Assembly (NCBI RefSeq): GCF_039654945.1
Contig: NW_027361819.1
Coordinates: 1,922,001 to 1,986,000, forward strand
Direction: 5' to 3'
From: Dendrobates tinctorius
Lineage: Eukaryota
Length of the DNA stretch: 64,000 bases
The translations under genes and the position numbers were made by a program. The notes below the pieces were generated by a model. It was given only the letters and a program-made list of their open reading frames with translations, ran no database searches and was not told the origin of the DNA. Below, one piece after another: positions 1-64,000 of the stretch (position 1 is its first letter; the number at the start of each line of letters is the position of its first letter).

Positions 1-3000
1 GCTTACACCAGGGTTTCTGTGTAAATCTCTGATTCAAATGGAATCCCTAGTGGAAGATTCCTTGTAATGAGGCAGAGAGAGGCACTGTGGCTGTCATCTG
101 ACCTGTGATCCGGCAGTGTCAGTGTTTTTAGGTGTGTATAAAAGCATGGTCCGCCACAGTTTTGTGCACTTCTGAAAAAGGCAACACTGAACAGAGGCCA
201 GACGGAGTACAGAGTAACTCTGCTGCCTCATTATAGTAAATGAATCATTCTGGGGTTTCATCTGAATGTCGTCAACTCGGCGATTCAATAATACTTTCAG
301 TTCTGAAATTGAAGAAAAAAATAACCCTTAACCCTTTTTTTTTTAATATGTAGCTCAAGGGGGCAATTTTGAGTTTTAGGTTATGGTTCCCATAGGGTAG
401 TACTCCTGCAGATGTTTGTGTAACTCTGTCCAAGAACAAACCACAGTGAATTGACAGTCCGTGGTTCTTCTGACCTGAAAGGGAAAGCAGCTCTGCAGGC
501 ACTAAATACACCTGATTGAGAAGATCACACTGGCCTTGAATAAGAAGGAAGCAACGTGGAGAAGCTTTGATGGTCAAGATGGCCTCCGGGAGAGTAGAGT
601 CTGAGAGGACTGCCTTTAAAGCTTAAACATGTTGAGTCGCCTCAACTGGAAGCCCACATTATTACCAAGAAAATCGCCAGTCATTTTAAAGAATTCCTGA
701 AACATTTGGAAAACTTAGAGAAGCAAGAGTTGTCTGAGAACCCCAGACAAGCTAGACACATCTCGGTAAAATTTTCAAGAGTTGGAAGCCAGGAGTGAGG
801 AACTGTCTCGGGACATTTCTCGAATTAAGGACTTGGTCAACAAAAAAAGATGTCCTATTGATTTTACAAGCAAAAGATGATGTATGTAATGGAGATAAGT
901 GTCTCCTCTATGCTATGGGTGATCTGAATGTAGGGGTGATCTCTGAGATTCTACAGAAAGGCATGGCAGAGTTTGTGACCCACGCTGAGACTTGTATCTC
1001 TCTACGTAGAGTCTTGCCAATCATTATGGATGTAAATTTGGCTCATAAAAGGATGGAGATCTCAGAAGACTTGAAAACCCATATCGGCTTCTGATGTGAA
1101 GCATGATCGTCCGCCCTCAAGATTTAGTACTTGCACTCAAGTCTTGAGCACCTATTGCTTCACTGAGCAATGCAGCACTACTAGGAAGTCGAAACCAGCA
1201 GCCAATGAATATGGGACGTTGGTTTGGCTTATTCTAGTATCGAAAGAGAAGGGAAATGTTATGGGATTGGAGACCATAACTGTGTCCTGGTTTTTGTAGA
1301 GATACACGATAAAGTCCCCTCTGGCCCATAACTCAAAAGCCAAGTTCCTAATTATTGAGCAGTGTTCCCCAATAATAGGCAAGTAGCTGAATTAGGAGGG
1401 TGGACTCTTGGAGTTTTATGAGCTACGTGACCAGGAGCGGCACTTGTTCTGACATCTACATACTTTCCAAGCCAATTTCCAGGAATGTTTGCATGCAGCA
1501 TTCTATGTAGACAATGGGGCTCGGATTAAGGTCCTCCTATAGAAATATTACTGTCTGTAACTTGGGGTGCACTAAATGTGTTTTACATAGTAGTGTTGAT
1601 GGTTCATTGGTGTCACTGTTTGATGTTCACAATAAAAATTTCAAAGAATTCATTTCTTCTCCTTTTTCTTTTTTTTGCTTTATCTGAGTTCCCTTAGAAG
1701 CTTCAAAATGTGTTGGAGACCTCATGTCTGTTGGTTTCTCCTTTTGTCTTGGGCTCAAGATTCTTGTAGGAAGTTTCATAAGCCGGTGACCACATGTACC
1801 CCATTTAGTAAGCAGAAACATCTCTTGTCCCAGCGATCACGTGATCGCTCGTAAGGAGCGGGGGCTTACGGGTCTTGGTAGACTCCGATCAGTACAAAGA
1901 AGGCTAAATTTGACCTGTAACTGGGGCTAACTGGCAGCAAGCAGAGATCATGGACATCGGTAAATGTGCACAGGAACTTTTAGTTCTAGAACTTTACCAG
2001 AAGGTGTCACTGTTCGCTCACCAGGCGCTATAATGTACCCTAGCGTAATATTGTATAATGTGATGAGCTGTAAGATGTATTTTATGCTATACACCCCTCT
2101 CAACATGGCAAGCAGGGATTACAATGGCACCCTAAATGTGATGCATCATGGTGGAAAAATAAAGAAAAATGGCAGACATTACACAGAATGTTAGGAGGAG
2201 GACATCAGAGACTCCGGGCATCCCATCCTCGTCACTCCCGGGACCTACCGCAGGCCGTGTCCTGAAGCTGAACCCCATGATAACGCTGTCTGTGGCGGTG
2301 TCCGAGAATGGGAAGATATGAGTGTCTAAGACATACATGTATTTACGGGGCTGATCTAGGGCCTGGTGGGTGGTCTTGTCTAAGGTATATTTTGAGGCTC
2401 ACTTTAGAGTCTGCATTTCATTAATGGTCTGGTTATAGTTCAGGTGAGATGTATTTATGGGACATGGTTTTGGCCATTTATAAATTTGAGACTCCCTTTA
2501 TTAGGGGTTAGTCTGATCTGAGGCCTCTATGGTGGGGGATCTGGTCTTAGGCCTTTATCAGGGGGGAGGGGATCCGGCCTGAGGCTAGTATTGGGAGATC
2601 TGAGGCCTCTATTGGGGGGCAGAGTTGGTCTGGGGTCTGTACTACGGGGCTCTGATCTGAAGCCTGTTTTTCATTAGTGGGACCGTTTTGCTTTAGGGGG
2701 TTTGTGTTAATGGGGTCTGAGAATGGTTGGACTGGTCTCATCAGAAGAGACATTAGAGATGACGGCAGGAAGGGGTTGGTTCATTGGCCTTCCATCCGGC
2801 AGTCACCAATTACTGACTGGGAGATTGCTCAAGGGTCTCACTAATCGATTTGCTCATCTGGTCTAGTGTTTGTGTTTAATGTGGTCAGGCCTGGGGTCTT
2901 TACATATTTTATGGGGTCTAGTTACCAGTCTCTATCTTGTGGGATCGGATTTGGGGTCTGTTTTGGTTTGGTTGATGGGGTCTGCTGTGGCGTCCGATTT

Positions 3001-3052
3001 TGTTCTCGAGCATTTGGCAGTAATGGCTGTCGGATTCTTCCTATTCTCTGTA

Positions 3053-4619
3053 CAGTGGGGAAGAAAAGTCTTTAGTCAGCCACCAATTGTGCAAGTTCTC
3101 CACTTATAAAGATGAGAGCGGCCTGTAATTGACATCATAGGTAGACCACAACTATGAGAGTCAAAATGAGAAAACAAATCCAGAAAATCACCTTGTCTGA
3201 TTTGGGAAGATTTATATTGCAAATTATGGTGGAAAATAAGTATTTGGTCATTAACAAAAGTTCATCTCAATACTTTGTGATATATCCTTTGTTGGCAATG
3301 ACAGAGGTCAAACGTTTTCTGTAAGTCTTCACAAGGTTGGCACACACTGTTGGCGGTATGTTGGCCCATTCCTCCATGCAGATCTCCTCTTGAGCGGTGA
3401 TGTTTTGGGCCTGTCGCTGGGCAACACGGACTTTCAAATCCCTGCAAAGGTTTTCTATGGGGTTGAGATCTGGAGACTGGCTAGGCCACTCCAGGACCTT
3501 CATATGCTTCTTACTAAGCCACTCCTTTGTTGCCCTGGCGGTGTGCTTGGGATCATTATCATGCTGAAAGTCCCATCTACGTTTCATCTTCAATGCCCTT
3601 GCTGATAGGAGGTTTGCACTCAAACTCTCACGATACATGGTCCATTCATTATGTCATGTACACGGATCAGTTGTCCTGGTCCCTTTGCAAAGAAACAGCC
3701 CCAAAGCATGATGTTGCCACCCCCATGCTTCACAGTAGGTATGGTGTTCTTTGGATACAACTCAGCATTCTGTTTCCTCCAAACACGATGAGTTTTGTTT
3801 CTACCAAACAGTTCTACTTTGGTTTCATCAGACCATATGACATTTTCCCAATACTCTTCTGGATAATCTAAATGCTCTCTACTAAACTTCAGACGGGCCC
3901 GGACATGTACTGGCTTAAGCAGGGGGACACGTCTGGCACTGCAGGATCTGAGTCCCTGGTGGCGTAGTGTGTTACTGATGGTAGTCTTTGTTACAGTGGT
4001 CCCAGCTCTATACAGGTCATTCACTAGGTCCCCCCATGTGGTTCTGGGATTTTTGCTCACCGTTCTTGTGATCATTTTGACCCCACGGGGTGAGATCTTG
4101 TGTGGAGCCCCAGTTTGAGAGAGATTATCAGTGGTCTTGTATGTCTTCCATTTTCTTATAATTGCTCCCACAGTTGATTTCATCACACCAAGCAGCTTGC
4201 CTATTGCAAATTCAGTCTTCCCAGCCTGGTGCAGGGCTACAATTTTGTTTCTGGTGTCCTTCTACAGCTCTTTGGTCTTCACCATAGTGGAGTGTGACTG
4301 TTTGAGGTTGTGGACAGGTGTCTTTTATACTGATAAGTTCATTACTACAGGTAATGAGTGGAGGACAGAGGAGCCTCTTAAAGAAGAATTTACAGGTCTG
4401 TGAGAGCCAGAAATCTTGCATGTTATTAGGTGCCCAAATACTTATTTTCCACCATAATTTGCAAAATAAATCTTGCCAAATCAGACAAGGTGATTTTTCT
4501 AGATTTGTTTTCTCATTGTGACTCTCATAGTTGTGGTCTACCTATGAGGCCTCTCTCACCTTTTTAAGTGAGAGAACTTGCACAATTGGTGGCTGACTAA
4601 ATACTTTTTTTCCCCACTA
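3053..4619 (-). mobile_element. Tc1-family (DD34E) DNA transposon, defective
   Basis: TA-flanked, ~200-bp inverted repeats (cagtggggaagaaaagt... / ...actttttttccccacta). Transposase runs 4285->3267 (MVKTKEL*..., [23 protein letters not shown]) with a TAG at codon 8 and a frameshift near 3630. Confidence 0.95.
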
Positions 4620-5335
4620 TATGTGTCTGCCGGGGTGGTGGGAGGTTTCTGATTTTCTGATTTCTTTATTAGATCTGTGTCTCTGCTCATGATTCTGTGA
4701 CTTTTTCCCACAGCTCTGCTCTGAGGACAGGGATAATTTTAGCATTACTGTACATCCCATCATCTATTTTGGCCATCACCTTTTACAAGGGCCAGGAATA
4801 GCCAGTAATCCTATCCTGCTCGTTCAGTGTCTTCCCTGGCCGCTGACCAGTCAGAATTCTTGCCCCTTGTAGCGAGAAAGCTTTTCCAAACAAAAATAAA
4901 AAATACACTCCTGATAAATATCGGTCGTCCTCATCTGTCAATTAATGAAAAACTTCTTGGATGTTTGGGTGCTAACCAAAATACCAATATGGCTGGCAGT
5001 ATTGATCTTACAAGTGGTGCTTGTCTCTCATTTTTCCCAGGCTTAAGATTAGTAAGTCCACCAGATTAATGCAGGTTTTCCACTCTGAAGCCATATTGGT
5101 GGTCACCCAGTTTTTCCAAGTTCTGTTTACTGGGGTTTAGGCTCAGTAACCTTGGACTGGGAGTTTGTTGTGGGGACACTCAGGCGGCAGATCAGGTTCA
5201 CACTGAGGACTTGAAGACTCAGCCGAGTGTAATTATCAGAAGGAACAGCTGAGACGTGCAGGACGCTACAACAGCTGAAGTCTGAAGTGAATATTCGGCA
5301 CTGTTGTCGCTGCGCTCCACTCCTTGCTGGACTCG

Positions 5336-6883
5336 ATGGCGACTGCAGATCTGAAGGACGAGCTGAACTGTTCCATATGCCTGAATATCTACATGGAGCC
5401 TGTAACTCTGAGATGTGGCCACAGCTTCTGCCAGGGATGTATCCGATCGGTACTGGACAGGCAAGATGGAGTTGGCATCTACACCTGCCCAGAATGCCGT
5501 GCAGAATACCAAAAGCGCCCACCATTGCGACGGAACTTGAAGCTTTGTAACATCGTGGAGCATTTCCGGTCAACGCAACCAGAGGCGAAGCCTCCCGGGA
5601 TCTTCTGCACCTACTGCGTCCATGCCTCCGTCCCAGCATTCAAGACTTGCCTGATGTGCGAAGCTTCTCTGTGCAGTGTCCATCTGAGCGTTCACAGCAA
5701 ATCCACCGACCACGTCTTGACAGAGCCCACCAGCTCCATGGACAACAGAAAATGTGCCACTCACCAGGAGATGCTAAAGTACTACTGCTGTAAAGATGCC
5801 GCCTGCATCTGCGTGTCATGTTGCGTGTTTGGAGAACATCGAGGACATCAGGTGGAACTTCTCAAAGAGGCATCTGAGAAGAAGAAAGAAAAACTAAGAA
5901 AAGTTCTGGAAAAGCTGTCCTCAAAATGTGAAGAGACGGAGAAGAGCATGCAAAGTTTACAAGATCACAAGAGGGGAGTCAAGGAGAAAGCCGCAAACAT
6001 GACGACATGGGTGACTGCTCTGTTTAAGGACATCAAGGCCCAGGTCCAAGCTCTGGAAGAACGGGTCTTGAGTGACATCTCCAAACAGAGGGATAAAGTC
6101 TCGCTCTCAGTCACTGATCTGATCCAGCAACTGGAGATGAAGAAGGAGGAGTTGTCCAGGAAGATGATGTACATCGAGGAGCTGTGCCAAGTGCCCGATC
6201 CACTCGATGTCCTACAGGGACGGGACGTCAGCAGAGCTGAGCCGCCAGATGAAGGACTTGGTAAGAGGCTGCAGGCTGTAGGTGATCTTGATGAAGTTCT
6301 GACCTCGTTGACCCTACAGTCATCTTTATCCAGTATTGTGACCAACTTAAAGCAAAACGTTAACGTCCAAAACTTAATGCTGGACATTAAGACGGCGGCG
6401 GTTGATGTGGCTGTGTCCGGAGACCTGAAGAGCGCTACGTGGTCCAAGACCCCGATCTGGACAAAAGCTTCACAAAGATTTAAAAACTATTGTCAGGTTC
6501 TGAGTTTTCAGAGTTTTAGCTCTGGAAAGATTTACTGGGAAGTGGAGACCAGTGAACTAGGGAATTGGAGGGTGGGGGTGGCATATCCCAGCCTGGAGCG
6601 GAAGGGAGATCTGTCCGGGATAGGACAGAACAACAAATCCTGGTGCCTTCGCCTGTGTCAGAAGGATTATCTTGTCGCTCATGCTGCAAAAGAGATTCCA
6701 CTACAGCTGGAGACCTCGCTGCAGAGACTAGGTATATTCCTGGACTACGAGGCTGGGCGGCTGTCCTTCTATCGGCTGTGTGAGCCCATTCAACATCTCC
6801 ACACCTTCACTGCCACCTTCACAGAGCCTCTTCATGCAGTGTTTCTGGTATGGCGGGACGGTTGGGTGAGAATCCGGAGCTAG
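5336..6883 (+). CDS. Intronless TRIM E3 ubiquitin ligase (RING, B-box1, B-box2, coiled coil, PRY/SPRY), 515 aa
   Basis: First ATG at 5336 (MATADLKDELNCSIC...CGHSFC..C...CPEC). B-boxes CTYC..CLMC..C..H and C..H..CC..C..C..H..H. SPRY motifs YWEVE, WRVGVAY, LGIFLDYEAGRLSFY. AATAAA at 7895-7900 is a possible polyA signal. The subfamily cannot be named without a tree. Confidence 0.95.
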   Translation: MATADLKDELNCSICLNIYMEPVTLRCGHSFCQGCIRSVLDRQDGVGIYTCPECRAEYQKRPPLRRNLKLCNIVEHFRSTQPEAKPPGIFCTYCVHASVPAFKTCLMCEASLCSVHLSVHSKSTDHVLTEPTSSMDNRKCATHQEMLKYYCCKDAACICVSCCVFGEHRGHQVELLKEASEKKKEKLRKVLEKLSSKCEETEKSMQSLQDHKRGVKEKAANMTTWVTALFKDIKAQVQALEERVLSDISKQRDKVSLSVTDLIQQLEMKKEELSRKMMYIEELCQVPDPLDVLQGRDVSRAEPPDEGLGKRLQAVGDLDEVLTSLTLQSSLSSIVTNLKQNVNVQNLMLDIKTAAVDVAVSGDLKSATWSKTPIWTKASQRFKNYCQVLSFQSFSSGKIYWEVETSELGNWRVGVAYPSLERKGDLSGIGQNNKSWCLRLCQKDYLVAHAAKEIPLQLETSLQRLGIFLDYEAGRLSFYRLCEPIQHLHTFTATFTEPLHAVFLVWRDGWVRIRS

Positions 6884-8819
6884 GATTACTAACCTAGATG
6901 ACCTGGTCCTTTAGGATGGAAGCCCTTCGAGCCTTATCCTAACTGCCAGCCTCTACGGTGCCTCTTCTGATTTGGTAGGCCTTGCGTGATGTCATGTATG
7001 CGTTGTGCCGCAACAATGACGTCACATTGGGCTTGCCAATCAGAAGACGAGTTGAGGATTGGTGTAGGTGGTAAGGTGGAGGTTTGTTGACTCCTAACTG
7101 GTGGCCACTTAGTAGTGGCTGTTGGGCCAGGGTCCAACGAATTGTTTAGCTCATGTTTATTTTCGAAAAAGATAAAAATGGGAAACGCTAATTTTAAAGG
7201 AACTCTTCAGACAAAACTCTAGGTGGGGCACCAGACGGCATTATAATGCTCCACCACCTCAGATCAGTGTTTCGATTTTACGTTTAAGGTTTTTTTTAAC
7301 AGAAAATTAGTCTAGGAAGGCTCCTCATGAGCTTTGCTAAAGTTTTCCTTTTTAAAGCGGCTTGTCAAATCCTGTTAACATAAAGGGATATTCTGATCTA
7401 CACAAATGGTCACATATCTGCTGGATCAAGGTGGGTCTGAACATTGGGACTTATATTGGTCACCAGAATGGGGGATTCTCCATTCTCCCCTGACCTCAAG
7501 ACGATGGCGGGAGTTGTTGACTTGAGTGCAGGTGACTATAGATTCTGTTCATCAGTCGTGGGGCCTGAATGGAACTTCATTCAGACAAGGTCTTCCGGCC
7601 AAGGGAGATCGGCTATTGATGGGTGTCCCAATGGGTAGATCCACACCAATCTATCCAGTGGTTATTTGATCATCTTGTGTAGATCTAAAGCATGTAATGA
7701 AAACTTCTGACACTTTTGTTTACATATTCTTACTTTCTCTGCTTGCTTTCAGTGAATGAAAACCTTTATTGTCCTCGTGTGGAACATGATTGAATGTTTC
7801 ATATGTGTGACCCAAATGTATCTCGCTTGTCTGTTAAATTTGACCATTTTATGGTTTATTTTTGGATGTTACTCTCTGTATGCAGAATCCAATCAATAAA
7901 CCTTTCCTTCTGATGAATTGTGACTTTTACATTTTTGGTCTTCACTGCTGTCTCCTTCCCTGGACATATCTGGCCACCTTCTCTAGGTTTGTGGCTCCTC
8001 TACTTCTCTATGACCCTACAGCCACCTCCCCACCCTATTATACCTCTGATCCGAGGAGCCTTACACATTTTTATCCGGATGAGCCCCATTTCTCCAGGAC
8101 CCCTATAGCCGCTGCTTGTCCTGCCTCTTTAGCAAGTCAAGAGTTCCAATAAGGTGTGGGGCTTCTGAACATTTTCACTTATGGAGGCGACCATGGACAT
8201 TAATGAGGTCGGAATTAAAATATCCTGCAAATTAGGATTCTCCTGCTGGTCTGTAGAGTGATGGCGACTATATAGGTTGTCGCCCAGATTTTCCCCAAAA
8301 ATTGCTGATCGTGCCTGTGAGGAGCAGGTTTTTTTTTTCTTTCTTTAGACATGTTTATTATGTGCACTCGATGGCGGCATAACCACTGGTAAGTCACAAA
8401 CTACTGCAACTACGGAAAGACCACCACCCCAAGAAACTCCCTGCAGATCATCACATCGTTGGCTCCGAGAACCTGCAGGACATTTCTCTGTCCCCTGTAT
8501 AGTATAATTATGTAACACACCGCCACCATCCGCCCATAGCACATATGGATGGTGACATTACCGCAGCGCTGCAGCAGCTGACTCACATCCTGGGCTCAGC
8601 TCTTGCACAAGGCTCCCAGAGTGATGTTTCCGTTCTTAGCACAAACCTGAGAAAAAACTCAGCAGCTTCTAAATGTGCAGAAGTCAGAGCTGCATCCATT
8701 GGGGTGTCGGGGGGCCGCTGGTTCTCAAAGACCCGAAGAGATAAAGTCCTGAGGTTACAGAAACCAATGACCAGTAGGGATCAGCTGCCAACGGTTCTTC
8801 CCCTGATGATGTCACAGTT

Positions 8820-11800
8820 CACCATATAGTGTCAATGCGACCATATACAGCCCGTGTAATACCACCATATAGTGTCAATGCGACCATATACAGCCCGTGT
8901 AATACCACCATATAGTGTCAATGCAGCCATATACAGCCCGTGTAATACCACCATATAGTGTCAATGCGACCATATACAGCCCGTGTAATACCACCATATA
9001 GTGTCAATGCGACCATATACAGCCCGTGTAATACCACCATATAGTGTCAATGCGACCATATACAGCCCCTGTAATACCACCATATAGTGTCAATGCGACC
9101 GTATACAGCCCCTGTAATACCACCATATAGTGTCAATGCGACCATATACAGCCCCTGTAATACCACCATATAGTGTCAATGCGACCATATACAGCCCGTG
9201 TAATACCACCATATAGTGTCAATGCGACCATATACAGCCCGTGTAATACCACCATATAGTGTCAATGCGACCATATACAGCCCGTGTAATACTACCATAT
9301 AGTGTCAATGCGACCATATACAGCCCCTGTAATACCACCATATAGTGTCAATGCGACCATATACAGCCCGTGTAATACCACCATATAGTGTCAATGCGAC
9401 CATATACAGCCCGTGTAATACCACCATATAGTGTCAATGCGGCCATATACAGCCCGTGTAATACCACCATATAGTGTCAATGCGACAATATACAGCCCGT
9501 GTAATACCACCATATAGTGTCAATGCGGCCATATACAGCCCCTGTAATACCACCATATAGTGTCAATGCGACCATATACAGCCCGTGTAATACCACCATA
9601 TAGTGTCAATGCGACCATATACAGCCCATGTAATACCACCATATAGTGTCAATGCGACCATATACAGCCCGTGTAATACCACCATATAGTGTCAATGCGA
9701 CCATATACAGCCCGTGTAATACCACCATATAGTGTCAATGCGACCATATACAGCCCGTGTAATACCACCATATAGTGTCAATGCGACCATATACAGCCCC
9801 TGTAATACCACCATATAGTGTCAATGCGACCATATACAGCCCGTGTAATACCACCATATAGTGTCAATGCGACCATATACAGCCCGTGTAATACCACCAT
9901 ATAGTGTCAATGCGACCATATACAGCCCCTGTAATACCACCATATAGTGTCAATGCGACCATATACAGCCCGTGTAATACCACCATATAGTGTCAATGCG
10001 ACCATATACAGCCCCTGTAATACCACCATATAGTGTCAATGCGACCATATACAGCCCCTGTAATACCACCATATAGTGTCAATGCGACCATATACAGCCC
10101 GTGTAATACCACCATATAGTGTCAAGGCGGCCATATACAGCCCCTGTAATACCACCATATAGTGTCAATGCGGCCATATACAGCCCGTGTAATACCACCA
10201 TATAGTGTCAATGCGACCATATACAGCCCCTGTAATACCACCATATAGTGTCAATGCGGCTATATACAGCCCGTGTAATACCACCATATAGTGTCAATGC
10301 GACCATATACAGCCCGTGTAATACCACCATATACACTGTGTTCCAAATTATTATGCAAATGATATTTTTCTCTGATTTTCCTAAATAGTCGGTACAAATG
10401 ACAGTCAGTCTAATAATAGTCATCACCGGTTAGATTATACATCACATTTTATTGAAGAAACCTCCCAATGATAACAGTATAATCTCCAAAATGAATAAAA
10501 ACTCAAATTTCACTGTTCCGAATTATTAGGCACAGTAGAATTTCTAAACATTTGATCTGTTTTAAAGAACTGAAAATGTTCATTTGTGGAATTTGCAGCA
10601 TTAGGAGGTCACATTCACCGAACAAAAAAGCTATTTAACTCCAAAACATCCTAACAGGGCAAGTTACGTGGTAACATAGGAACCCTTCTGTGATGTCACC
10701 TTCACAATTCTTGCATCCATTGAACTTGGGAGTTTTTGGAGAGTTTCTGCTTGTATTTCTTTACATGAAGTCGGAATAGTCTCCCAGAGCTGCTGTTTGA
10801 TGTGAACTGCCTCCCACCCTCATAGATCTTTCGCTTGATGATACTCCAAAGGTTCTCTATAGGGTTGAGGTCAGGGGAGGATGGTGGCCACACCATGAGT
10901 TTATCTCCTTTTATGCCCATAGCAGCCAATGACTCAGAGGTCTTCTTTGCAGCATGAAGAGGATTTTGCTCCTGAAGGCACGTTTCTGCTTTTTATACCA
11001 TGGAAGACAGCTGTCAGTCAGAAACTCTATATACTTTGCAGAGGTCATTTTCACACCTTCAGGAACCTTAAAGAGCCCTACCAGCTGTTTTCCCATGATT
11101 CCGGCCCAAAACATGACTCCTCCACCTCCTTGCTGAAGTCGCAGCCTTGTTGGGACATAGTGGCCATCCCCCAACCATCCACTACTCCATCCATCTGGAC
11201 CATCCAGGGTTGCTCGACACTCATCAGTAAACAAGAATGTATGAAAAATAGTCTTCATGTATGTCTGGACCCACTGCTACAATTTCTGCTTGTGAACACT
11301 GTTTAGGGGTGGCCGAATAGTAGGTTTATGCAGCACAGCAAGCCTTTGAAGGATCCTACACCTTGAGGTTCGAGGGACTCCAGAGGCACCAGCAGCTTTA
11401 AATATCTGTTTTCTGGCTTGTAATGGCTTTTTAGCAGCTGCTCTCTTAATCCGATGAACTTGCCTGGCAGAAACCTTCCTCATTCTGCCTTTATCAGCAC
11501 AAACATGTCTGTGCTCAGAATCAACCACAATTCTCGTAACAGTGCGATGGTCACGTTTAAGTTTTTGGGAAATATCTAATGTTTTCATCTCTTGACCAAG
11601 GCATTGCACTATTTGATGCTTTTCAGCAGCAGAGAGATCCTTTTTCTTTCCTAAATTCCTTGAAACCTGTGCCCTGCTTAATAATGTGGAACATCATTCT
11701 TAAGTAGCTTTCCTTTAATTGAGCTCACCTGGTAAACTAATTATCACAGGAATTTGAGATTGATTTCTGTGATCCAAAGAGCCCTGATACACAATACCAT

Positions 11801-45420: not shown

Positions 45421-45464
45421 TCCACAGACAGCTGTTTCGAGGTATTGCCCCTCATCAGTGTGGA
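45421..45464 (-). ncRNA. Minimal type I hammerhead ribozyme, copy 3
   Basis: As copy 1, but the 3' strand of stem II is CCUC (one G-C becomes a G-U wobble). Core intact. Confidence 0.88.
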
Positions 45465-52027: not shown

Positions 52028-52743
52028 TATGTGTCTGCCGGGGTGGTGGGAGGTTTCTGATTTTCTGATTTCTTTATTAGATCTGTGTCTCTGCTCATGA
52101 TTCTGTGACTTTTTCCCACAGCTCTGCTCTGAGGACAGGGATAATTTTAGCATTACTGTACATCCCATCATCTATTTTGGCCATCACCTTTTACAAGGGC
52201 CAGGAATAGCCAGTAATCCTATCCTGCTCGTTCAGTGTCTTCCCTGGCCGCTGACCAGTCAGAATTCTTGCCCCTTGTAGCGAGAAAGCTTTTCCAAACA
52301 AAAATAAAAAATACACTCCTGATAAATATCGGTCGTCCTCATCTGTCAATTAATGAAAAACTTCTTGGATGTTTGGGTGCTAACCAAAATACCAATATGG
52401 CTGGCAGTATTGATCTTACAAGTGGTGCTTGTCTCTCATTTTTCCCAGGCTTAAGATTAGTAAGTCCACCAGATTAATGCAGGTTTTCCACTCTGAAGCC
52501 ATATTGGTGGTCACCCAGTTTTTCCAAGTTCTGTTTACTGGGGTTTAGGCTCAGTAACCTTGGACTGGGAGTTTGTTGTGGGGACACTCAGGCGGCAGAT
52601 CAGGTTCACACTGAGGACTTGAAGACTCAGCCGAGTGTAATTATCAGAAGGAACAGCTGAGACGTGCAGGACGCTACAACAGCTGAAGTCTGAAGTGAAT
52701 ATTCGGCACTGTTGTCGCTGCGCTCCACTCCTTGCTGGACTCG

Positions 52744-54291: not shown

Positions 54292-56227
54292 GATTACTAA
54301 CCTAGATGACCTGGTCCTTTAGGATGGAAGCCCTTCGAGCCTTATCCTAACTGCCAGCCTCTACGGTGCCTCTTCTGATTTGGTAGGCCTTGCGTGATGT
54401 CATGTATGCGTTGTGCCGCAACGATGACGTCACATTGGGCTTGCCAATCAGAAGACGAGTTGAGGATTGGTGCAGGTGGTAAGGTGGAGGTTTGTTGACT
54501 CCTAACTGGTGGCCACTTAGTAGTGGCTGTTGGGCCAGGGTCCAACGAATTGTTTAGCTCATGTTTATTTTCGAAAAAGATAAAAATGGGAAACGCTAAT
54601 TTTAAAGGAACTCTTCAGACAAAACTCTGGGTGGGGCACCAGACGGCATTATAATGCTCCACCACCTCAGATCAGTGTTTCGATTTTACGTTTAAGGTTT
54701 TTTTTAACAGAAAATTAGTCTAGGAAGGCTCCTCATGAGCTTTGCTAAAGTTTTCCTTTTTAAAGCGGCTTGTCAAATCCTGTTAACATAAAGGGATATT
54801 CTGATCTACACAAATGGTCACATATCTGCTGGATCAAGGTGGGTCTGAACATTGGGACTTATATTGGTCACCAGAATGGGGGATTCTCCATTCTCCCCTG
54901 ACCTCAAGACGATGGCGGGAGTTGTTGACTTGAGTGCAGGTGACTATAGATTCTGTTCATCAGTCGTGGGGCCTGAATGGAACTTCATTCAGACAAGGTC
55001 TTCCGGCCAAGGGAGATCGGCTATTGATGGGTGTCCCAATGGGTAGATCCACACCAATCTATCCAGTGGTTATTTGATCATCTTGTGTAGATCTAAAGCA
55101 TGTAATGAAAACTTCTGACACTTTTTTTTACATATTCTTACTTTCTCTGCTTGCTTTCAGTGAATGAAAACCTTTATTGTCCTCGTGTGGAACATGAATG
55201 AATGTTTCATATGTGTGACCCAAATGTATCTCGCTTGTCTGTTAAATTTGACCACTTTATGGTTTATTTTTGGATGTTACTCTCTGTATGCAGAATCCAA
55301 TCAATAAACCTTTCCTTCTGATGAATTGTGACTTTTACATTTTTGGTCTTCACTGCTGTCTCCTTCCCTGGACATATCTGGCCACCTTCTCTAGGTTTGT
55401 GGCTCCTCTACTTCTCTATGACCCTACAGCCACCTCCCCACCCTATTATACCTCTGATCCGAGGAGCCTTACACATTTTTATCCGGATGAGCCCCATTTC
55501 TCCAGGAGCCCTATAGCCGCTGCCTGTCCTGCCTCTTTAGCAAGTCAAGAGTTCCAATAAGGTGTGGGGCTTCTGAACATTTTCACTTATGGAGGCGACC
55601 ATGGACATTAATGAGGTCGGAATTAAAATATCCTGCAAATTAGGATTCTCCTGCTGGTCTGTAGAGTGATGGCGACTATATAGGTTGTCGCCCAGATTTT
55701 CCCCAAAAATTGCTGATCGTGCCTGTGAGGAGCAGGTTTTTTTTTTCTTTCTTTAGACATGTTTATTATGTGCACTCGATGGCGGCATAACCACTGGTAA
55801 GTCACAAACTACTGCAACTACGGAAAGACCTCCACCCCAAGAAACTCCCTGCAGATCATCACATCGTTGGCTCCGAGAACCTGCAGGACATTTCTCTGTC
55901 CCCTGTATAGTATAATTATGTAACACACCGCCACCATCCGCCCATAGCACATATGGATGGTGACATTACCGCAGCGCTGCAGCAGCTGACTCACATCCTG
56001 GGCTCAGCTCTTGCACAAGGCTCCCAGAGTGATGTTTCCGTTCTTAGCACAAACCTGAGAAAAAACTCAGCAGCTTCTAAATGTGCAGAAGTCAGAGCTG
56101 CATCCATTGGGGTGTCGGGGGGCCGCTGGTTCTCAAAGACCCGAAGAGATAAAGTCCTGAGGTTACAGAAACCAATGACCAGTAGGGATCAGCTGCCAAC
56201 GGTTCTTCCCCTGATGATGTCACAGTT

Positions 56228-59200
56228 CACCATATAGTGTCAATGCGACCATATACAGCCCGTGTAATACCACCATATAGTGTCAATGCAGCCATATACA
56301 GCCCGTGTAATACCACCATATAGTGTCAATGCGACCATATACAGCCCGTGTAATACCACCATATAGTGTCAATGCGACCATATACAGCCCGTGTAATACC
56401 ACCATATAGTGTCAATGCGACCATATACAGCCCCTGTAATACCACCATATAGTGTCAATGCGACCGTATACAGCCCCTGTAATACCACCATATAGTGTCA
56501 ATGCGACCATATACAGCCCCTGTAATACCACCATATAGTGTCAATGCGACCATATACAGCCCGTGTAATACCACCATATAGTGTCAATGCGACCATATAC
56601 AGCCCGTGTAATACCACCATATAGTGTCAATGCGACCATATACAGCCCGTGTAATACCACCATATAGTGTCAATGCGACCATATACAGCCCCTGTAATAC
56701 CACCATATAGTGTCAATGCGACCATATACAGCCCGTGTAATACCACCATATAGTGTCAATGCGACCATATACAGCCCGTGTAATACCACCATATAGTGTC
56801 AATGCGGCCATATACAGCCCGTGTAATACCACCATATAGTGTCAATGCGGCCATATACAGCCCGTGTAATACCACCATATAGTGTCAATGCGACAATATA
56901 CAGCCCGTGTAATACCACCATATAGTGTCAATGCGGCCATATACAGCCCCTGTAATACCACCATATAGTGTCAATGCGACCATATACAGCCCGTGTAATA
57001 CCACCATATAGTGTCAATGCGACCATATACAGCCCATGTAATACCACCATATAGTGTCAATGCGACCATATACAGCCCGTGTAATACCACCATATAGTGT
57101 CAATGCGACCATATACAGCCCGTGTAATACCACCATATAGTGTCAATGCGACCATATACAGCCCATGTAATACCACCATATAGTGTCAATGCGACCATAT
57201 ACAGCCCCTGTAATACCACCATATAGTGTCAATGCGACCATATACAGCCCGTGTAATACCACCATATAGTGTCAATGCGACCATATACAGCCCGTGTAAT
57301 ACCACCATATAGTGTCAATGCGACCATATACAGCCCCTGTAATACCACCATATAGTGTCAATGCGACCATATACAGCCCGTGTAATACCACCATATAGTG
57401 TCAATGCGACCATATACAGCCCGTGTAATACCACCATATAGTGTCAATGCGACCATATACAGCCCGTGTATTACCACCATATAGTGTCAATGCGGCCATA
57501 TACAGCCCGTGTAATACCACCATATAGTGTCAATGCGGCCATATACAGCCCCTGTAATACCACCATATAGTGTCAATGCGGCCATATACAGCCCGTGTAA
57601 TACCACCATATAGTGTCAATGCGACCATATACAGCCCCTGTAATACCACCATATAGTGTCAATGCGACCATATACAGCCCCTGTAATACCACCATATAGT
57701 GTCAATGCGACCATATACAGCCCGTGTAATACCACCATATACACTGTGTTCCAAATTATTATGCAAATGATATTTTTCTCTGATTTTCCTAAATAGTCGG
57801 TACAAATGACAGTCAGTCTAATAAAAGTCATCACCCGTTAGATTATACATCAAATTTTATTGAAGAAACCTCCCAATGATAACAGTATAATCTCCAAAAT
57901 GAATAAAAACTCAAATTTCACTGTTCCGAATTATTAGGCACAGTAGAATTTCTAAACATTTGATCTGTTTTAAAGAACTGAAAATGTTCATTTGTGGAAT
58001 TTGCAGCATTAGGAGGTCACATTCACCGAACAAAAAAGCTATTTAACTCCAAAACATCCTAACAGGGCAAGTTACGTGGTAACAGAGGAACCCTTCTGTG
58101 ATGTCACCTTCACAATTCTTGCATCCATTGAACTTGGGAGTTTTTGGAGAGTTTCTGCTTGTATTTCTTTACATGAAGTCGGAATAGCCTCCCAGAGCTG
58201 CTGTTTGATGTGAACTGCCTCCCACCCTCATAGATCTTTCGCTTGATGATACTCCAAAGGTTCTCCATAGGGTTGAGGTCAGGGGAGGATGGTGGCCACA
58301 CCATGAGTTTATCTCCTTTTATGCCCATTGCAGCCAATGACTCAGAGGTCTTCTTTGCCGCATGAAGAGGATTTTGCTCCTGAAGGCATGTTTCTGCTTT
58401 TTATACCATGGAAGACAGCGGTCAGTCAGAAACTCTATATACTTTGCAGAGGTCATTTTCACACTTTCAGGAACCTTAAAGAGCCCTACCAGCTGTTTCC
58501 CCATGATTCCGGCCCAAAACATGACTCCTCCTCCTTGCTGAAGTCGCAGCCTTGTTGGGACATAGTGGCCATCCACCAACCATCCACTACTCCATCCATC
58601 TGGACCATCCAGGGTTGCTGGACACTCATCAGTAAACAAGACTGTATGAAAATTAGTCTTCATGTATGTCTGGACCCACTGCTACAATTTCTGCTTGTGA
58701 ACACTTTTTAGGGGTGGCCGAATAGTAGATTTATGCACCACAGCAAGCCTTTGAAGGATCCTACACCTTGAGGTTCGACGGACTCCAGAGGCACCAGCAG
58801 CTTTAAATATCTGTTTGCTGGTTTGTAATGGCTTTTTAGCAGCTGCTCTCTTAATCCGATGAACTTGCCTGGCAGAAACCTTCCTCATTCTGCCTTTATC
58901 AGCACAAACATGTCTGTGCTCAGAATCAACCACAATTCTCGTAACAGTGCGATGGTCACGTTTAAGTTTTTGGGAAATATCTAATGTTTTCATCTCTTGA
59001 CCAAGGCATTGCACTATTTGATGCTTTTCAGCAGCAGAGAGATCCTTTTTCTTTCCTAAATTCCTTGAAACCTGTGCCCTGCTTAATAATGTGGAACATC
59101 ATTCTTAAGTAGCTTTCCTTTAATTGAGCTCACCTGGTAAACTAATTATCACAGGAATTTGAGATTGATTTCTGTGATCCAAAGAGCCCTGATACACAAT

Positions 59201-60547
59201 ACCATCTATGAGTTTATTTGAAAAACAAAAAATAACATCTTTATGACACTTAAATCCAATTTGCATAATAATTTGGAACGCAGTGTAGTATCAATGCGAC
59301 CATATACAGCCCGTGTAATACCACCATATAGTGTCAATGCGACCATATACAGCCCCTGTAATACCACCATATAGTGTCAATGCGACCATATACAGCCCCT
59401 GTAATACCACCATATAGTGTCAATGCGGCTATATACAGCCCGTGTAATACCACCATATAGTGTCAATGCGGCCATATACAGCCCGTGTAATACCACCATA
59501 TAGTGACAATGCGGCCATATACAGCCCGTGTAATACCACCATATAGTGTCAATGCGACCATATACAGCCCCTGTAATACCACCATATAGTGTCAATGCGA
59601 CCATATACAGCCCCTGTAATACCACCATATAGTGTCAATGCGACCATATACAGCCCCTGTAATACCACCATATAGTGTCAATGCGGCTATATACAGCCCG
59701 TGTAATACCACCATATAAAGCCCATGTAATACCACCATATAGTGTCATTGCGACCATATACAGCCCATGTAATACCACCATATAATATCAATGCAGCCAT
59801 ATACAGCCCGTGTAATACCACCATATAGTGTCAATGTGACCCTATACAGCCCGTGTATTACCACCATATAGTGTCAATGCGACCATATACAGCCCGTGTA
59901 ATACCACCATATAGTGTCAATGCGACCATATACAGCCCGTGTAATACCACCATATAGTGTCAATGCGACCATATACAGCCCCTGTAATACCACCATATAG
60001 TGTCAATGCGGCTATATACAGCCCGTGTAATACCACCATATAAAGCCCATGTAATACCACCATATAGTGTCATTGCGACCATATACAGCCCATGTAATAC
60101 CACCATATAATATCAATGCAGCCATATACAGCCCGTGTAATACCACCATATAGTGTCAATGTGACCCTATACAGCCCGTGTATTACCACCATATAGTGTC
60201 AATGCGACCATATACAGCCCGTGTAATACCACCATATAGTGTCAATGCGACCATATACAGCCCGTGTAATACCACCATATAGTGTCAATGTGACCCTATA
60301 CAGCCCGTGTATTACCACCATATAGTGTCAATGTGACCCTATACAGCCCGTGTAATACCACCATATAGTGTCAATGCGACCATATACAGCCCGTGTAATA
60401 CCACCATATAGTGTCAATGTGACCCTATATAGCCCGTGTATTACCACCATATAGTGCCTATGCGGCCATACATAGCCCGTTTAATACCACCATATGGTGT
60501 CAATGCGGCCATACATAGCCCGTGTAATACCACCATATAGTGTCAAT
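56228..60547. repeat. 43-bp minisatellite, duplicate
   Basis: Same unit; shorter than copy A to the right of the TRT insertion. Confidence 0.96.
57742..59285 (-). mobile_element. TRT-type Tc1-like transposon, duplicate
   Basis: Same TIRs, same TA site and same internal deletion as 10334-11880. Confidence 0.9.
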
Positions 60548-60879
60548 ATAATACGGCCATACTATTGTAATGTGCTGCCATATGTAGCCCGCATAATACC
60601 ACAATACAATGGCTAAGATAATATGAAATAAGATAATACTGCAATTGAAATCTAAAAAACTCACTGTATGTTACATAAGTTTTCCTGCCAGCACATCCGT
60701 AGTTGCAACAGATTCTTTGCTGCATATACTGCCCATGTGCACAGAGCCTAAGCCTCTGCTTTTCTCCTGGAGTTCTTGTCACCAGGACCCGATCTCACAG
60801 ATCACTTATGAGATTACCGAGCTCTAAAACTGAACATGAGATACACAGGAATTATAATGTAACCAATTATAAAGGTCCG

Positions 60880-63800
60880 CTGCTATAACCTGGGTGTATT
60901 ATGTATATAATTATATATGTACAGCTGCTATAACCTGGGTGTATTATGTATATAATTATATATGTACAGCTGCTATAACCTGGGTATATTATGTACATAA
61001 TGATATATGTACAGCTGCTATAACCTGGGTATATTATGTACAGTATATAATATATGTACAGCTGGTATAACCTGGGCATATCCTGTATTTAATGATATAT
61101 GTACAGCTGGTATAACCTGGGCATCTCCTGTATATAATTATATATGTACAGCTGGTATAACCTGGGCATCTCCTGTATATAATTATATATGTACAGCTGG
61201 TATAACCTGGGCATCTCCTGTATATAATTATACATGTACAGCTAGTATAACCTGGGCATCTCATGCATAAAATTATACATGTACAGCTGGTATAACCTGG
61301 GCATCTCATGTATATAATTATACATGTACAGCTGGTATAACCTGGGTATCTCCTGTATATAATTATATATGTACAGCCGGTATAACCTGGGCATCTCCTG
61401 TATATAATTATATATGTACAGCTGGTATAACCTGGGCATATCCTGTATATCCAAAATTCTAAAATAGCATGGTCGCTACCTCCTAGGGTCCCAGCCACTT
61501 TTACCTCCTCAACCATTTCCTCCCTGTTTATAAGGATTAGATCCAAGGTAGCAGTTCCCCTTGTTTTCTCCCGTACCTTTTGGAAGATAAAGTTGTCAGC
61601 AAGAGAGGATAAGAATTTCCTTGACCTGTTAGTTTTGCCTGAGAGAGATTCCCAACAAATGTCTGGATAGTTGAAATCTCCCATGACAACTATGTCATAT
61701 TTTTTGGAGAACTTGGCCATCTGATGCATAAAGAGTTCATCCATATCTTCAGCTTGCACAGGCGGCCTGTAGTAAATGCCTACAATGGTGTCCTTTCCAT
61801 TGTTCTGTCCTTGTATTCTTACCCAAACAGTTTCCACAGAACTCCCAGTCTCTGAAGCTTCAATCTCTGTGCAGATATACGCGTTTCGAACATACAATGC
61901 GACACCCCCTCCTCGTTTATCAAGTCTGTTTCTTGCAAATAAGTTGTATCCTTCTAGTCTTGTATTCCAATCATGTGTATTGTCCCACCAAGTTTCAGTG
62001 ATTCCAATTACATCATAGTTCTACATCATTATATATGTACAGCTGGTATAACCTGGGCATCTCCTGTATATAATTATATATGTACAGCTGGTATAACCTG
62101 GGCATCTCCTGCATATAATTATATATGTACAGCTGGTATAACCTGGGCATCTCCTGTATATAATTACACATGTACAGCTGGTATATCCTGGGCATCTCCT
62201 GTATATAATTACATATGTACAGCTGGTATAACCTGGGCATCTCCTGTATATAATTATATATGTACAGCTGGTATAACCTGGGCATCTCCTGCATATAATT
62301 ATATATGTATAGCCGGTATAACCTGGGCATCTCCTACATATAATTATATATGTACAGCTGGTATAACCTGGGCATCTCCTGTATATAATTATATATGTAC
62401 AGCTGGTATAACCTGGGCATCTCCTGCATATAATTATATATGTATAGCCGGTATAACCTGGGCATCTCCTACATATAATTATATATGTACAGCTGGTATA
62501 ACCTGGGCATCTCCTGTATATAATTATACATGTACAGCTGGTATAACCTGGGCATCTCATGTATATAATTATACATGTACAGCTGGTATAACCTGGGCAT
62601 CTCCTGCATATAATTATATATGTATAGCCGATATAACCTGGGCATCTCCTGCATATAATTAAATATGTACAGCCGGTATAACCTGGGCATCTCCTGCATA
62701 TAATTATATATGTATAGCTGGTATAACCTGGGCATCTCCTGCATATAATTATATATGTACAGCTGGTATAACCTGGGCATCTCCTGTATATAATTACACA
62801 TGTACAGCTGGTATAGCCTGGGCATCTCCTGTATATAATTATATATGTACAGCTGGTATAACCTGGGCATCTCCTGTATATAATTATATATGTACAGCTG
62901 GTATAACCTGGGCATCTCCTGCATATAATTATATATGTATAGCCGGTATAACCTGGGCATCTCCTGCATATAATTATATATGTATAGCCGGTATAACCTG
63001 GGCATCTCCTGCATATAATTATATATGTACAGCTGGTATAACCTGGGCATCTCCTGTATATAATTATATATGTACAGCTGGTATAACCCGGGTATCGCCT
63101 GTACATAATTATACATGTACAGCTGGTATAACCTGGGTATATTATGTACATAATGATATATGTACAGCTGTTATAACCTGGGTATATTATGTACAGTATA
63201 TAATAATATATGTACAGCTGGTATAACTAGGGCATCTCCTGTATTTAATGATCTATGTACAGCTGGTATAACCTAGGCATCTCCTATATTTAATGATATA
63301 TGTACAGTTGGTATAACCTGGGCATCTCCTGTATATAATTATATATGTACAGCTGGTATAACCTGGGCATCTCATGTATATAATTATACATGTACAGCTG
63401 GTATAACCTGGGCATCTCATGTATAAAATTATACATGTACAGCTGGTATAACCTGGGCATCTCATGTATAAAATTATACATGTACAGCTGGTATAACCTG
63501 GGCATCTCATGTATAAAATTATACATGTACAGCTGGTATAACCTGGGCATCTCATGTATATAATGATACATGTACAGCTGGTATAACCTGGCCATCTCAT
63601 GTATATAATGATACATGTACAGCTGGTATAACCAGGGCATCTCAAGTATACAACGATACATGTACAGCTGGTATAACCTGGGCATCTCCTGTATATAATG
63701 GTATATGTACAGCCGGTATAACCTGGGCATCTCCTGTATATAATTATATATGTACAGCTGGTATAACCTGGGCATCTCCTGTATATAATTATATATGTAC

Positions 63801-64000
63801 AGCCGGTATAACCCGGGCATCTCCTGTATATAATGATATATGTACAGCCGGTATAACCCGGGCATCTCCTGTATATAATTATATATGTACAGCCGGTATA
63901 ACCCGGGCATCTCCTGTATATAATTATATATGTACAGCTGGTATAACCTGGGCATCTCCTGTATATAATCATATATGTACAGCCGGTATAACCTGGGCAT
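60880..64000. repeat. 45-bp minisatellite, duplicate (runs off window)
   Basis: Same unit and same variant order as 13733-17258, with unit-number differences. Confidence 0.96.
61451..62022 (-). mobile_element. CR1 endonuclease fragment, duplicate
   Basis: Same junctions as 14349-14920; frame still open. Confidence 0.9.

What the first reader, a model, noticed from the sequence alone, without database searches (positions are those of the whole stretch)
1..64000. LAT, normally single-copy, appears to lie inside a recent ~47.4-kb tandem duplication together with a TRIM gene
Seen: a direct repeat with ~47.4-kb offset running off both window edges, with LAT between the visible copies. Inference: if the copies are adjacent, every base of the period, including LAT, exists at least twice. 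Duplication of a dosage-sensitive TCR-signalling adaptor alongside an expanding TRIM cluster would be unusual. A false duplication from an uncollapsed haplotype is a real alternative.
Basis: partly seen in the sequence, partly recalled or inferred. Interest (0 to 1): 0.7.

Follow-up and report, generated by a model that had tools for sequence, protein, structure and literature searches.

The report
Poison-frog LAT gene duplicated with TRIM
In the dyeing poison frog genome a roughly 47-kb block carrying an immune TRIM ligase gene and the T-cell adaptor gene LAT is present twice in a row, and the LAT copy in this window has collected all five protein changes, including loss of a lipid-anchor cysteine.

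Summary
Window 1-13,142 matches 47,417-60,547 at 98.0%, and the match continues through satellites to 64,000. Each copy holds an intact 515-aa TRIM25-like gene. An intact 12-exon LAT gene (33,026-40,169, + strand) lies between the copies.

- RefSeq annotates two LAT genes on this same 7.13-Mb Dendrobates tinctorius contig: XP_073403398-401 (the window copy, 100% match, same 7,144-nt span) and XP_073403402-405 (6,328-nt span, 5 residues different).
- Contigs from the sequenced animal show two versions of 42.2-44.45 kb at about 1:1 and about 2.2% apart.
- The duplication junction is visible. A 1.3-kb element with 101-bp inverted ends (44,446-45,765) abuts the last 47 codons of an upstream TRIM that is full-length in Ranitomeya.
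- The two LATs are sister copies, so the duplication postdates the split from Ranitomeya.
- All five substitutions are on the window copy: C24W in the CxxC palmitoylation motif, Y137D and N139S in a YxN motif, C106F and S208N.

Limits:
- I did not see the 47-kb spacing of the second LAT directly.
- Read depth was uninformative.
- A false haplotype duplication is unlikely but not excluded.

The scan's only other notes on this are from this same window.

The parts
1..18442 (.). Visible part of repeat copy A (unit 1). It runs off the left window edge. It holds TRIM25-like A, a Tc1 remnant, and 43-bp and 45-bp satellites.
   Evidence: 98.04% identity to 47,417-60,547, continuing to 64,000.
45766..64000 (.). 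Repeat copy B (start of unit 2). Its left boundary is set by the junction. 47,417-64,000 is matched inside the window; 45,766-47,416 is inferred to match DNA left of the window.
   Evidence: Control: the other letters read at 47,698, 47,847, 47,850 and 47,871 are exactly copy A's letters.
5336..6883 (+). TRIM25-like gene A, single exon, 515 aa, intact.
   Evidence: Pfam RING, B-box, TRIM_CC, PRY, SPRY. One annotated place on the 7.13-Mb contig.
52744..54291 (+). TRIM25-like gene B, 515 aa, intact. It differs from A at 3 nt and 2 aa.
   Evidence: 94% identical to Ranitomeya orthologues.
33026..40169 (+). LAT coding region, window copy ('LAT-w'). Exons, each to within about 2 nt: 33026-33122, 33247-33282, 33815-33865, 34101-34166, 34530-34583, 35051-35092, 35429-35521, 35979-36065, 36150-36206, 36415-36471 (skipped in one isoform), 39900-39962, 40113-40169.
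   Evidence: tblastn of stored frog LAT proteins. P0150/P0128 are 100% identical to the exon cores. The annotated span of 7,144 nt equals 33,026-40,169. Splice-site context.
27708..27755 (+). Optional upstream coding exon (MLLNKTCNRHKDLQPK) sitting in an island within the 35-bp satellite. It is used in isoforms of the second LAT gene. A copy without an ATG lies at 23,510.
   Evidence: 16/16 residue match to the N-terminus of P0148. Sequence and donor site.
44446..45765 (.). Junction element of 1.3 kb. It has perfect 101-bp terminal inverted repeats, an internal 354-bp tandem repeat, very high copy number in the genome and no target-site duplication.
   Evidence: k-mer depth 1e4-1e5.
45766..45909 (+). 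Truncated 3' end of a second TRIM gene (last 47 codons and stop; the tblastn match starts 6 nt earlier, inside the element). It starts exactly at the element's end and marks the left breakpoint of unit 2.
   Evidence: tblastn 65-72% to TRIM C-termini. It lies 6.8 kb upstream of TRIM B, like the full 581/582-aa TRIM that lies 7.1/8.1 kb upstream in R. imitator and R. variabilis.
42213..44449 (.). Stretch downstream of LAT that exists in two versions in the sequenced animal. This is the right end of the duplicated unit.
   Evidence: Run X1's contigs are identical to the window. Contigs of X2 and X4 carry 49 differences in 2,219 nt plus indels and run on unlike the window past 44,449.
23595..32523 (.). 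35-bp (71-bp) satellite upstream of LAT coding exon 1.
37437..39552 (.). 38-bp satellite inside a LAT intron. Together with the 35-bp array it probably explains the different lengths of the two LAT genes.
   Evidence: gene spans.

Best explanation
This is a real, lineage-specific tandem segmental duplication in Dendrobates tinctorius with a unit of about 47 kb. Shared by three relatives is the order: upstream ~580-aa TRIM, TRIM25-like, then LAT on the same strand. Here the order is: [upstream TRIM, off-window] - TRIM25-like A - satellites - LAT-w - 1.3-kb inverted-repeat element - last 47 codons of the upstream TRIM - TRIM25-like B - satellites - [LAT-b and the original downstream DNA, off-window].

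Shown: the direct repeat; the junction; two annotated LAT genes on one contig; two sequence versions of the unit's right end in the animal's own reads; the two LATs being sister copies.

Inferred:
- The second LAT sits one unit downstream.
- The background age is about 2% divergence, and 8 kb or more around the TRIM gene was later homogenised by gene conversion.
- The inverted-repeat element had a part in forming the junction.
- LAT-b carries the ancestral function under purifying selection (0 changes). LAT-w evolves nearly neutrally or towards a changed role (5 changes, hitting the CxxC palmitoylation motif and one YxN motif).
For: - Repeat.
- Two LAT genes on the same 7,132,936-nt contig, XP_073403398-401 and XP_073403402-405. 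The first is 100% identical to the window's exons and has the identical 7,144-nt span. The second spans 6,328 nt and differs at 5 residues.
- Reads: 42.2-44.45 kb occurs in two versions at about 1:1 in one animal. The second version loses homology at 44,449, where the element starts. A related species also lacks the element there.
- Control: the other letters read at 47.7-47.9 kb equal copy A's letters.
- Junction: a truncated TRIM abuts the element with no target-site duplication. Its spacing to TRIM B matches the full-length upstream TRIM in Ranitomeya.
- Only two TRIM25-like sequences of this genome are in the 90% cluster, each encoded at one place.
- The 2.2% divergence beside LAT lies within the range seen between copies A and B outside the homogenised tract (1.4-4.3%).
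- Tree: the two D. tinctorius LATs are sisters (98/95 support), with branch lengths 0.019 and 0.
- Against an artefact: there are no gaps, the window lies more than 564 kb from either contig end, and the assembly was made from HiFi reads over 10 kb with hifiasm, haplotig purging and no scaffolding, from a captive-bred animal (PMC11152451).
Against: - The DNA beyond 64,000 could not be fetched, so I did not see adjacency or the 47-kb spacing of LAT-b.
- The reads were available only as Logan contigs, so depth could not separate four haploid copies from two.
- Divergence between A and B around the TRIM gene (0.41%) is five times lower than beside LAT (2.2%). That gap needs an added assumption of gene conversion.
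- The two LAT genes have consecutive accession numbers with no number left for TRIM B between them. This fits only if numbering follows gene starts that lie upstream of TRIM B, or does not follow position.
- No second individual was examined.
Confidence: 0.77

Rival explanations
1. False duplication. The two units are the two haplotypes of a single-copy locus, strung in series by the assembler through a chimeric join inside the high-copy 1.3-kb element. The frog would then have one LAT gene with two very different alleles.
For: - The join lies in a repeat with k-mer depth of 1e5.
- Both versions occur at about 1:1, as alleles would.
- A/B divergence of 0.4% around the TRIM gene is allele-like.
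- Depth could not be calibrated.
- The second version and the relative both lack the element at 44,446, which also fits a polymorphic insertion.
Against: - A 1.3-kb repeat is far shorter than the HiFi reads over 10 kb that were used. The assembly is a purged hifiasm primary without scaffolding or gaps, and only 1.9% of its BUSCO genes are duplicated.
- The window is deep inside the contig.
- The model needs two separate insertions of the element at exactly the two breakpoints.
- 2.2% divergence plus indels, kilobase differences in gene span and five amino-acid changes all on one 'allele' are unlikely in a captive-bred azureus animal.
Confidence: 0.12
2. The duplication is real but is a heterozygous or polymorphic structural variant. 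One haplotype of the sequenced animal carries the two-unit arrangement and the other carries the single ancestral unit, so part of the 'second version' in the reads is allelic.
For: Bubble-popped contigs cannot separate two versions from three. In run X4 the non-window version at 46,102-46,267 has depth 7.1 against 2.9 for the window version, which hints at unequal copy numbers.
Against: About 2% divergence between the units, and the five fixed differences in LAT, point to an old event that has had time to fix. Only two versions were seen wherever both were kept.
Confidence: 0.08
3. The second LAT gene lies elsewhere on the 7.13-Mb contig (a dispersed copy). The window's repeat would then be a separate insertional copy of only the TRIM part, so LAT is duplicated but not as part of this period.
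For: I could not obtain the coordinates of the second gene.
Against: The second version of the LAT flank ends precisely at the junction of the repeat. The accessions are consecutive. Two independent events that happen to share a breakpoint are not parsimonious.
Confidence: 0.03

Closest known systems
[quoted passage not shown]
   Same: It has the same exon-by-exon sequence, with a transmembrane segment, a juxtamembrane Cys motif, a YGYIEV motif, three YVNV motifs and one YENI motif. It sits in the same place downstream of the TRIM25-like gene.
   Different: Here there are two genes. The window copy reads WxxC instead of CxxC and has lost one YxN motif (YSN to DSS). The CxxC cysteines are the palmitoylation sites needed for raft association and stability (PMC8061762).
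Tandem segmental duplications in vertebrate immune TRIM clusters (fish finTRIM, primate TRIM5/TRIM22 and the TRIM25-like arrays elsewhere on this contig)
   Same: There is a direct repeat of tens of kb, intact intronless RING/B-box/PRY-SPRY genes, and unevenly low divergence around the TRIM gene of the kind gene conversion would give. The scan's own notes on neighbouring arrays agree.
   Different: The unit drags along a non-TRIM, normally single-copy signalling adaptor. There are only two units.
Tandem direct duplications made by alternative transposition of DNA transposons (maize Ac/Ds; PMC3744419)
   Same: An element with terminal inverted repeats sits exactly at the junction between the two units, and its flanks come from two different places and lack a target-site duplication.
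   Different: No transposase or activity is known for this frog element. The presence of the element at the other unit boundary could not be checked. The element may simply have been captured at a break. This is a resemblance only.
False duplications from uncollapsed haplotypes in long-read vertebrate assemblies
   Same: There are two near-identical blocks in one assembly, with both versions seen at about 1:1 in the reads.
   Different: There is no gap and no contig end, the blocks lie in tandem inside a 7-Mb HiFi contig, divergence is far above expected heterozygosity, and there is a defined breakpoint inside a gene.

Membership tests
LAT (PF15234) | Sequence homology to the LAT family over the whole protein | tested here: met
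   The window's exons are 100% identical to P0150/P0128 (D. tinctorius), whose precomputed Pfam family is PF15234, and 83-100% identical per exon to the Phyllobates LAT part. Scanning single exons against Pfam gave nothing.
LAT (PF15234) | N-terminal transmembrane segment followed by a CxxC palmitoylation motif | tested here: not met
   The window copy reads ...ITGLWISCHRK (WxxC). The second D. tinctorius gene and all outgroups read CISC. The transmembrane segment is present. So the window gene belongs to the family by descent, but this motif is altered.
LAT (PF15234) | Distal tyrosine motifs (a PLC-gamma-type site and YxN Grb2/Gads-type sites) | tested here: met
   YGYIEV, YVNV three times and YENI are present. 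One further YxN (YSN) is lost in the window copy only. Binding was not tested.
Tandem segmental duplication | Two direct copies of high identity on one contiguous sequence | tested here: met
   There is no N in the window.
Tandem segmental duplication | The whole period is duplicated, so everything between the visible copies exists twice | tested here: met
   There is a second LAT gene on the same contig and a second version of 42.2-44.45 kb in the reads. 18.4-33 kb was not tested directly.
Tandem segmental duplication | Head-to-tail adjacency of the two units | tested here: inconclusive
   The junction from the end of unit 1 to the start of unit 2 is in the window (44,446-45,766). DNA beyond 64,000 was not obtainable, so the position of the second LAT is inferred.
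Tandem segmental duplication | Doubled read depth relative to single-copy DNA | tested here: inconclusive
   Only Logan contigs were available and the runs were chosen because they hold this locus, so no baseline exists.
TRIM class with RING, B-box, coiled coil and PRY/SPRY | All four modules in order in one open frame | tested here: met
   Pfam hits above the curated cut-off for RING, B-box, TRIM_CC and SPRY in both copies; PRY falls just below its cut-off.
Assembly false duplication (uncollapsed haplotype) | Lies at a contig end or a scaffold gap | tested here: not met
   There is no N. Other notes on the same piece lie 564 kb before and 4.39 Mb beyond the window.
Assembly false duplication (uncollapsed haplotype) | Half-normal depth on each copy and no spanning reads | not testable with these tools
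   Raw HiFi reads were not available. The single read-laying run returned contigs only.

The most novel reading that the evidence does not exclude
The frog keeps two expressed LAT genes with divided roles. LAT-b is the canonical raft-targeted adaptor. LAT-w has one palmitoylation cysteine and one Grb2-type YxN site removed but keeps its PLC-gamma-type and YVNV sites, and acts as a differently localised or modulatory (for example dampening) adaptor. That would be a natural vertebrate experiment on LAT dosage and lipid anchoring. In addition, the duplication itself may have been made by an inverted-repeat transposon through alternative transposition, a mechanism so far shown mainly in maize.
Probability: 0.2. 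Interest if true: 0.65.

Novelty: new member of a known kind. Interest (0 to 1): 0.45.

Why it matters
In every other frog genome returned by the protein search that was checked here, LAT is a single gene, and it is the central scaffold of T-cell receptor signalling. A species with two copies offers a natural test of which features of LAT are dispensable when a backup exists. One copy is frozen, and the other is changed at exactly the lipid-anchor motif and a Grb2-type docking site. The locus also shows a clean duplication junction inside a gene with a transposon at the join, and uneven homogenisation between the copies. Both are useful for understanding how frog immune TRIM clusters grow. Practically, anyone genotyping or quantifying LAT or this TRIM in Dendrobates must tell the two copies apart. 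This is still an ordinary kind of event (a lineage-specific tandem duplication), and both genes are already in the public annotation, though I found no paper that mentions them.

Tried and rejected
- Pfam and NCBIfam scans of single LAT exon pieces found nothing. LAT is too short and disordered to be seen one exon at a time.
- The exhaustive protein search with coding exon 1 returned only a spurious repeat protein, P0006.
- The look-up of encoding contigs never returned DNA for this assembly or for the Ranitomeya assemblies ('file too large'), so flanks could not be read. P0128 is not on record because only the longest isoform is kept.
- P0005/L001 turned out to be a bacterial contig wrongly clustered with the TRIM. 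I ignored it.
- The search of earlier findings cannot look outside the window. Its search by relatives was blank.
- Copy number from depth was rejected as inconclusive. The depths are contig means, the runs were picked for holding the locus, and per-run coverage is unknown. The paper's supplement is not held.
- The model in which only the TRIM part was copied and LAT stays single (an insertional duplication) was rejected once two LAT genes were found on the contig.
- The hammerhead-ribozyme reading of the 354-bp units is not supported by Rfam, either at gathering scores over the whole window or at E up to 1 on 44,000-46,200.
- I built and searched no joined spliced model of my own. Exons were searched by reference one at a time, and full-length comparisons used stored database proteins only.
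Full report
**1. The observation**

A count of shared 20-mers peaks sharply at an offset of 47,400-47,499, with 10,101 shared words. Megablast aligns window 1-13,142 to 47,417-60,547 at 98.04% identity, with 167 mismatches and 31 gap openings. The match continues to 64,000 through 43-bp and 45-bp satellites, whose copy-number differences shift the offset from 47,416 to 47,103 and then 46,742.

**2. Content of the repeat**

- Each copy carries an intact single-exon ORF of 515 aa (5336-6883 and 52744-54291). Both hit RING, B-box, TRIM coiled-coil and SPRY above Pfam's cut-offs; PRY falls just below its cut-off. The two ORFs differ at 3 nt and 2 aa.
- Both are annotated on one 7,132,936-nt contig of GCA_039654945.1, each at one place.
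- Their 90% cluster holds just these two sequences from this genome, plus one TRIM25-like protein each from Ranitomeya imitator and R. variabilis at 94% identity.
- The assembly is Dendrobates tinctorius. It is a hifiasm primary assembly of HiFi reads over 10 kb from 18 SMRT cells, with aggressive haplotig purging and no scaffolding. It has 1.9% duplicated BUSCO genes and comes from one captive-bred 'azureus' male (PMC11152451).
- Notes of this scan on the same piece lie 564 kb before and 4.39 Mb beyond the window, so the window is deep inside the contig.

**3. LAT**

Searching the short exons one at a time failed in Pfam, in NCBIfam and in the exhaustive protein search.

The break came from a search with the SPRY part of the TRIM. 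It returned gene models of Phyllobates terribilis (725 aa) and Hyperolius riggenbachi (726 aa) that fuse this TRIM orthologue to a Pfam LAT domain. Mapping the stored Phyllobates protein on the window found LAT coding exons on the + strand between 33,026 and 40,166 at 83-100% identity per exon.

In R. variabilis a 250-aa LAT gene model spans the whole 20-kb neighbourhood of the TRIM25-like orthologue and of a 582-aa TRIM upstream of it. TRIM, TRIM, LAT on one strand is therefore the order seen in the relatives, which I take as ancestral.

**4. Two LAT genes**

A search with the LAT part of the Phyllobates protein, followed by a listing of cluster members, shows two D. tinctorius LAT genes on the same 7.13-Mb contig:

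| Gene | RefSeq name | Accessions (stored ids) | Coding span |
|---|---|---|---|
| LAT-w (window copy) | 'uncharacterized protein' | XP_073403398/400/401 (P0150 249 aa, P0128 231 aa) | 7,144 nt |

- The first set is 100% identical to the window's exons, and its annotated span of 7,144 nt equals 33,026-40,169 exactly.
- The second gene spans 6,328 nt even though its start codon lies in an extra upstream exon. In the window the matching exon is at 27,708, which is 12,462 nt from the stop. It is therefore a physically different locus with shorter satellites.
- The proteins differ at five positions: 24 W/C, 106 F/C, 137 D/Y, 139 S/N and 208 N/S. At every one the second gene has the residue of Ranitomeya, Phyllobates and Anomaloglossus, except position 208, where Anomaloglossus has T.
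- In a maximum-likelihood tree the two D. tinctorius proteins are sisters (98/95 support), with branch lengths of 0.019 for the window copy and 0 for the other.
- R. imitator and R. variabilis have one LAT gene each among the cluster members listed.

**5. The junction**

A tblastn of the TRIM on the window finds the C-terminal end of another SPRY domain at 45,760-45,906. That fragment begins exactly at the end of a 1.3-kb element (44,446-45,765) with perfect 101-bp terminal inverted repeats and an internal 354-bp tandem repeat. The element has no target-site duplication.

The fragment ends 6.8 kb upstream of TRIM B. In R. imitator and R. variabilis a complete 581/582-aa TRIM ends 7.1 and 8.1 kb upstream of the orthologue. 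So unit 2 starts inside that upstream TRIM, and unit 1 ends at about 44,445, 4.3 kb downstream of the LAT stop codon.

**6. Reads**

- DNA of unknown status left of the junction;
- the element;
- DNA inferred to be duplicated;
- 0.6 kb known to be duplicated.

The runs were three from the sequenced animal (X1, X2, X4) and one from a related species (X9). All were available only as Logan contigs.

Control: the other letters read at 47,698, 47,847, 47,850 and 47,871 are exactly copy A's letters.

Result for 42.2-44.45 kb:
- X1's contigs are identical to the window.
- Contigs of X2 and X4 carry 49 differences in 2,219 aligned letters plus four deletions.
- Where both versions survived bubble-popping, their depths were similar: 4 and 2, 2.8 and 3.8, 4 and 5.
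- The diverged version aligns only up to 44,449 and then runs on for about 570 letters unlike the window. It therefore lacks the element and the truncated TRIM.
- The relative's contig behaves the same way.
- At the listed variable sites the relative shares 11 letters with each version, so the two versions diverged symmetrically.

This is what the end of unit 2, followed by the original downstream DNA, should look like.

**7. Age and homogenisation**

Divergence between copies A and B is uneven:

| Region | Differences | Divergence |
|---|---|---|
| 47,417-47,809 | 17/393 | 4.3% |
| 47,810-48,100 | 5/291 | 1.7% |
| 48,101-56,227 | 33/8,127 | 0.41% |
| TRIM ORF | 3/1,560 | 0.2% |
| 57,742-59,285 | 22/1,547 | 1.4% |

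The 2.2% seen beside LAT falls inside the range of the non-TRIM parts. The simplest reading is one duplication about 2% old (the relative X9 is 3.1% away) followed by gene conversion around the TRIM gene. Other reports of this scan describe such copying in neighbouring TRIM25-like arrays (not tested here).

**8. Rival readings**

- An insertional copy of the TRIM part alone, with a single LAT, is excluded by the two annotated LAT genes.
- A false duplication would need a chimeric join through a 1.3-kb repeat in an assembly of reads over 10 kb. It would also need two insertions of the element at just the two breakpoints, and alleles in a captive-bred animal that differ by 2%, by kilobases of satellite and by five one-sided amino-acid changes. 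I give it about 0.12.
- Depth could not settle this. The figures are contig means, and the runs were selected for holding the locus.
- A heterozygous duplication remains possible (about 0.08).

**9. What the copies may do (inference)**

The first cysteine of the CxxC motif is changed to tryptophan in the window copy. LAT is dually palmitoylated at this motif, which it needs for raft association, stability and downstream signalling (PMC8061762). Y137D and N139S remove both key residues of one YxN motif.

With about 560 non-synonymous sites and about 1.1% neutral change per branch, about six changes would be expected per branch without constraint. The observed counts are five on the window copy and none on the other. 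LAT-b therefore looks constrained. LAT-w looks nearly unconstrained or redirected, yet it is still intact, with plausible splice sites. Expression of either copy was not tested.

**10. Mechanism of the duplication (inference)**

An element with inverted ends exactly at the join, flanked by DNA from two places without a target-site duplication, resembles the tandem direct duplications made by alternative transposition in maize (PMC3744419). A break repaired next to a repeat is equally possible.

**11. Verdict**

The event is an ordinary kind, a lineage-specific tandem duplication in a TRIM-rich region. Both genes are already in the public annotation. Its interest lies in LAT being involved and in the one-sided divergence of the window copy.

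Noticed in passing
window 44445-45667: Another note of this scan reads the 354-bp tandem units as carrying intact hammerhead ribozymes. Rfam gives no hammerhead match, either at gathering score over the whole window or at E up to 1 on 44,000-46,200. The only matches are hairpin-type miRNA models on the inverted end.
   Followed up: partly
window 36150-36206 and 36415-36471: The two neighbouring YVNV exons are not a novelty of this gene. Both are present in Ranitomeya imitator, R. variabilis and Phyllobates LAT. The second is alternatively skipped in annotated isoforms of both D. tinctorius genes and of R. variabilis.
   Followed up: yes
P0031 (Phyllobates terribilis, 725 aa) and P0049 (Hyperolius riggenbachi, 726 aa): Annotated isoforms splice the TRIM25-like ORF in frame onto LAT coding exon 1, giving TRIM-LAT fusion proteins in two distantly related frogs. 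LAT exon 1 in the window has a matching acceptor site just before its ATG (33,019/33,020). Whether such transcripts are real is unknown.
   Followed up: no
window 23510-23700 and 27708-27897: A 186-bp island holding the optional upstream LAT coding exon occurs twice at 96.8% identity: once just before the 35-bp satellite and once inside it. Only the inner copy has the ATG.
   Followed up: partly
window 906-1530 and 48313-48937: Weak PRY/SPRY-like stretches (29-38% identity to the TRIM) lie in both repeat copies, upstream of the TRIM gene. They are probably an old TRIM or B30.2 pseudogene fragment.
   Followed up: no
window 3267-4186 (-) and 50675-51669 (-): A Tc1/mariner transposase remnant (Pfam HTH_Tnp_Tc3_2) lies in both copies.
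   Followed up: partly
window 46400-47800: This stretch has very high copy number in the genome (k-mer depth 1e4-6e5 in all four runs, including the related species). It is also where divergence between copies A and B is highest, at 4.3%.
   Followed up: no
L001 (ENA contig_36668): A 57-aa protein from a bacterial contig sits in the same 90% cluster as the frog TRIM. This is an oddity of the clustering and has nothing to do with the locus.
   Followed up: partly
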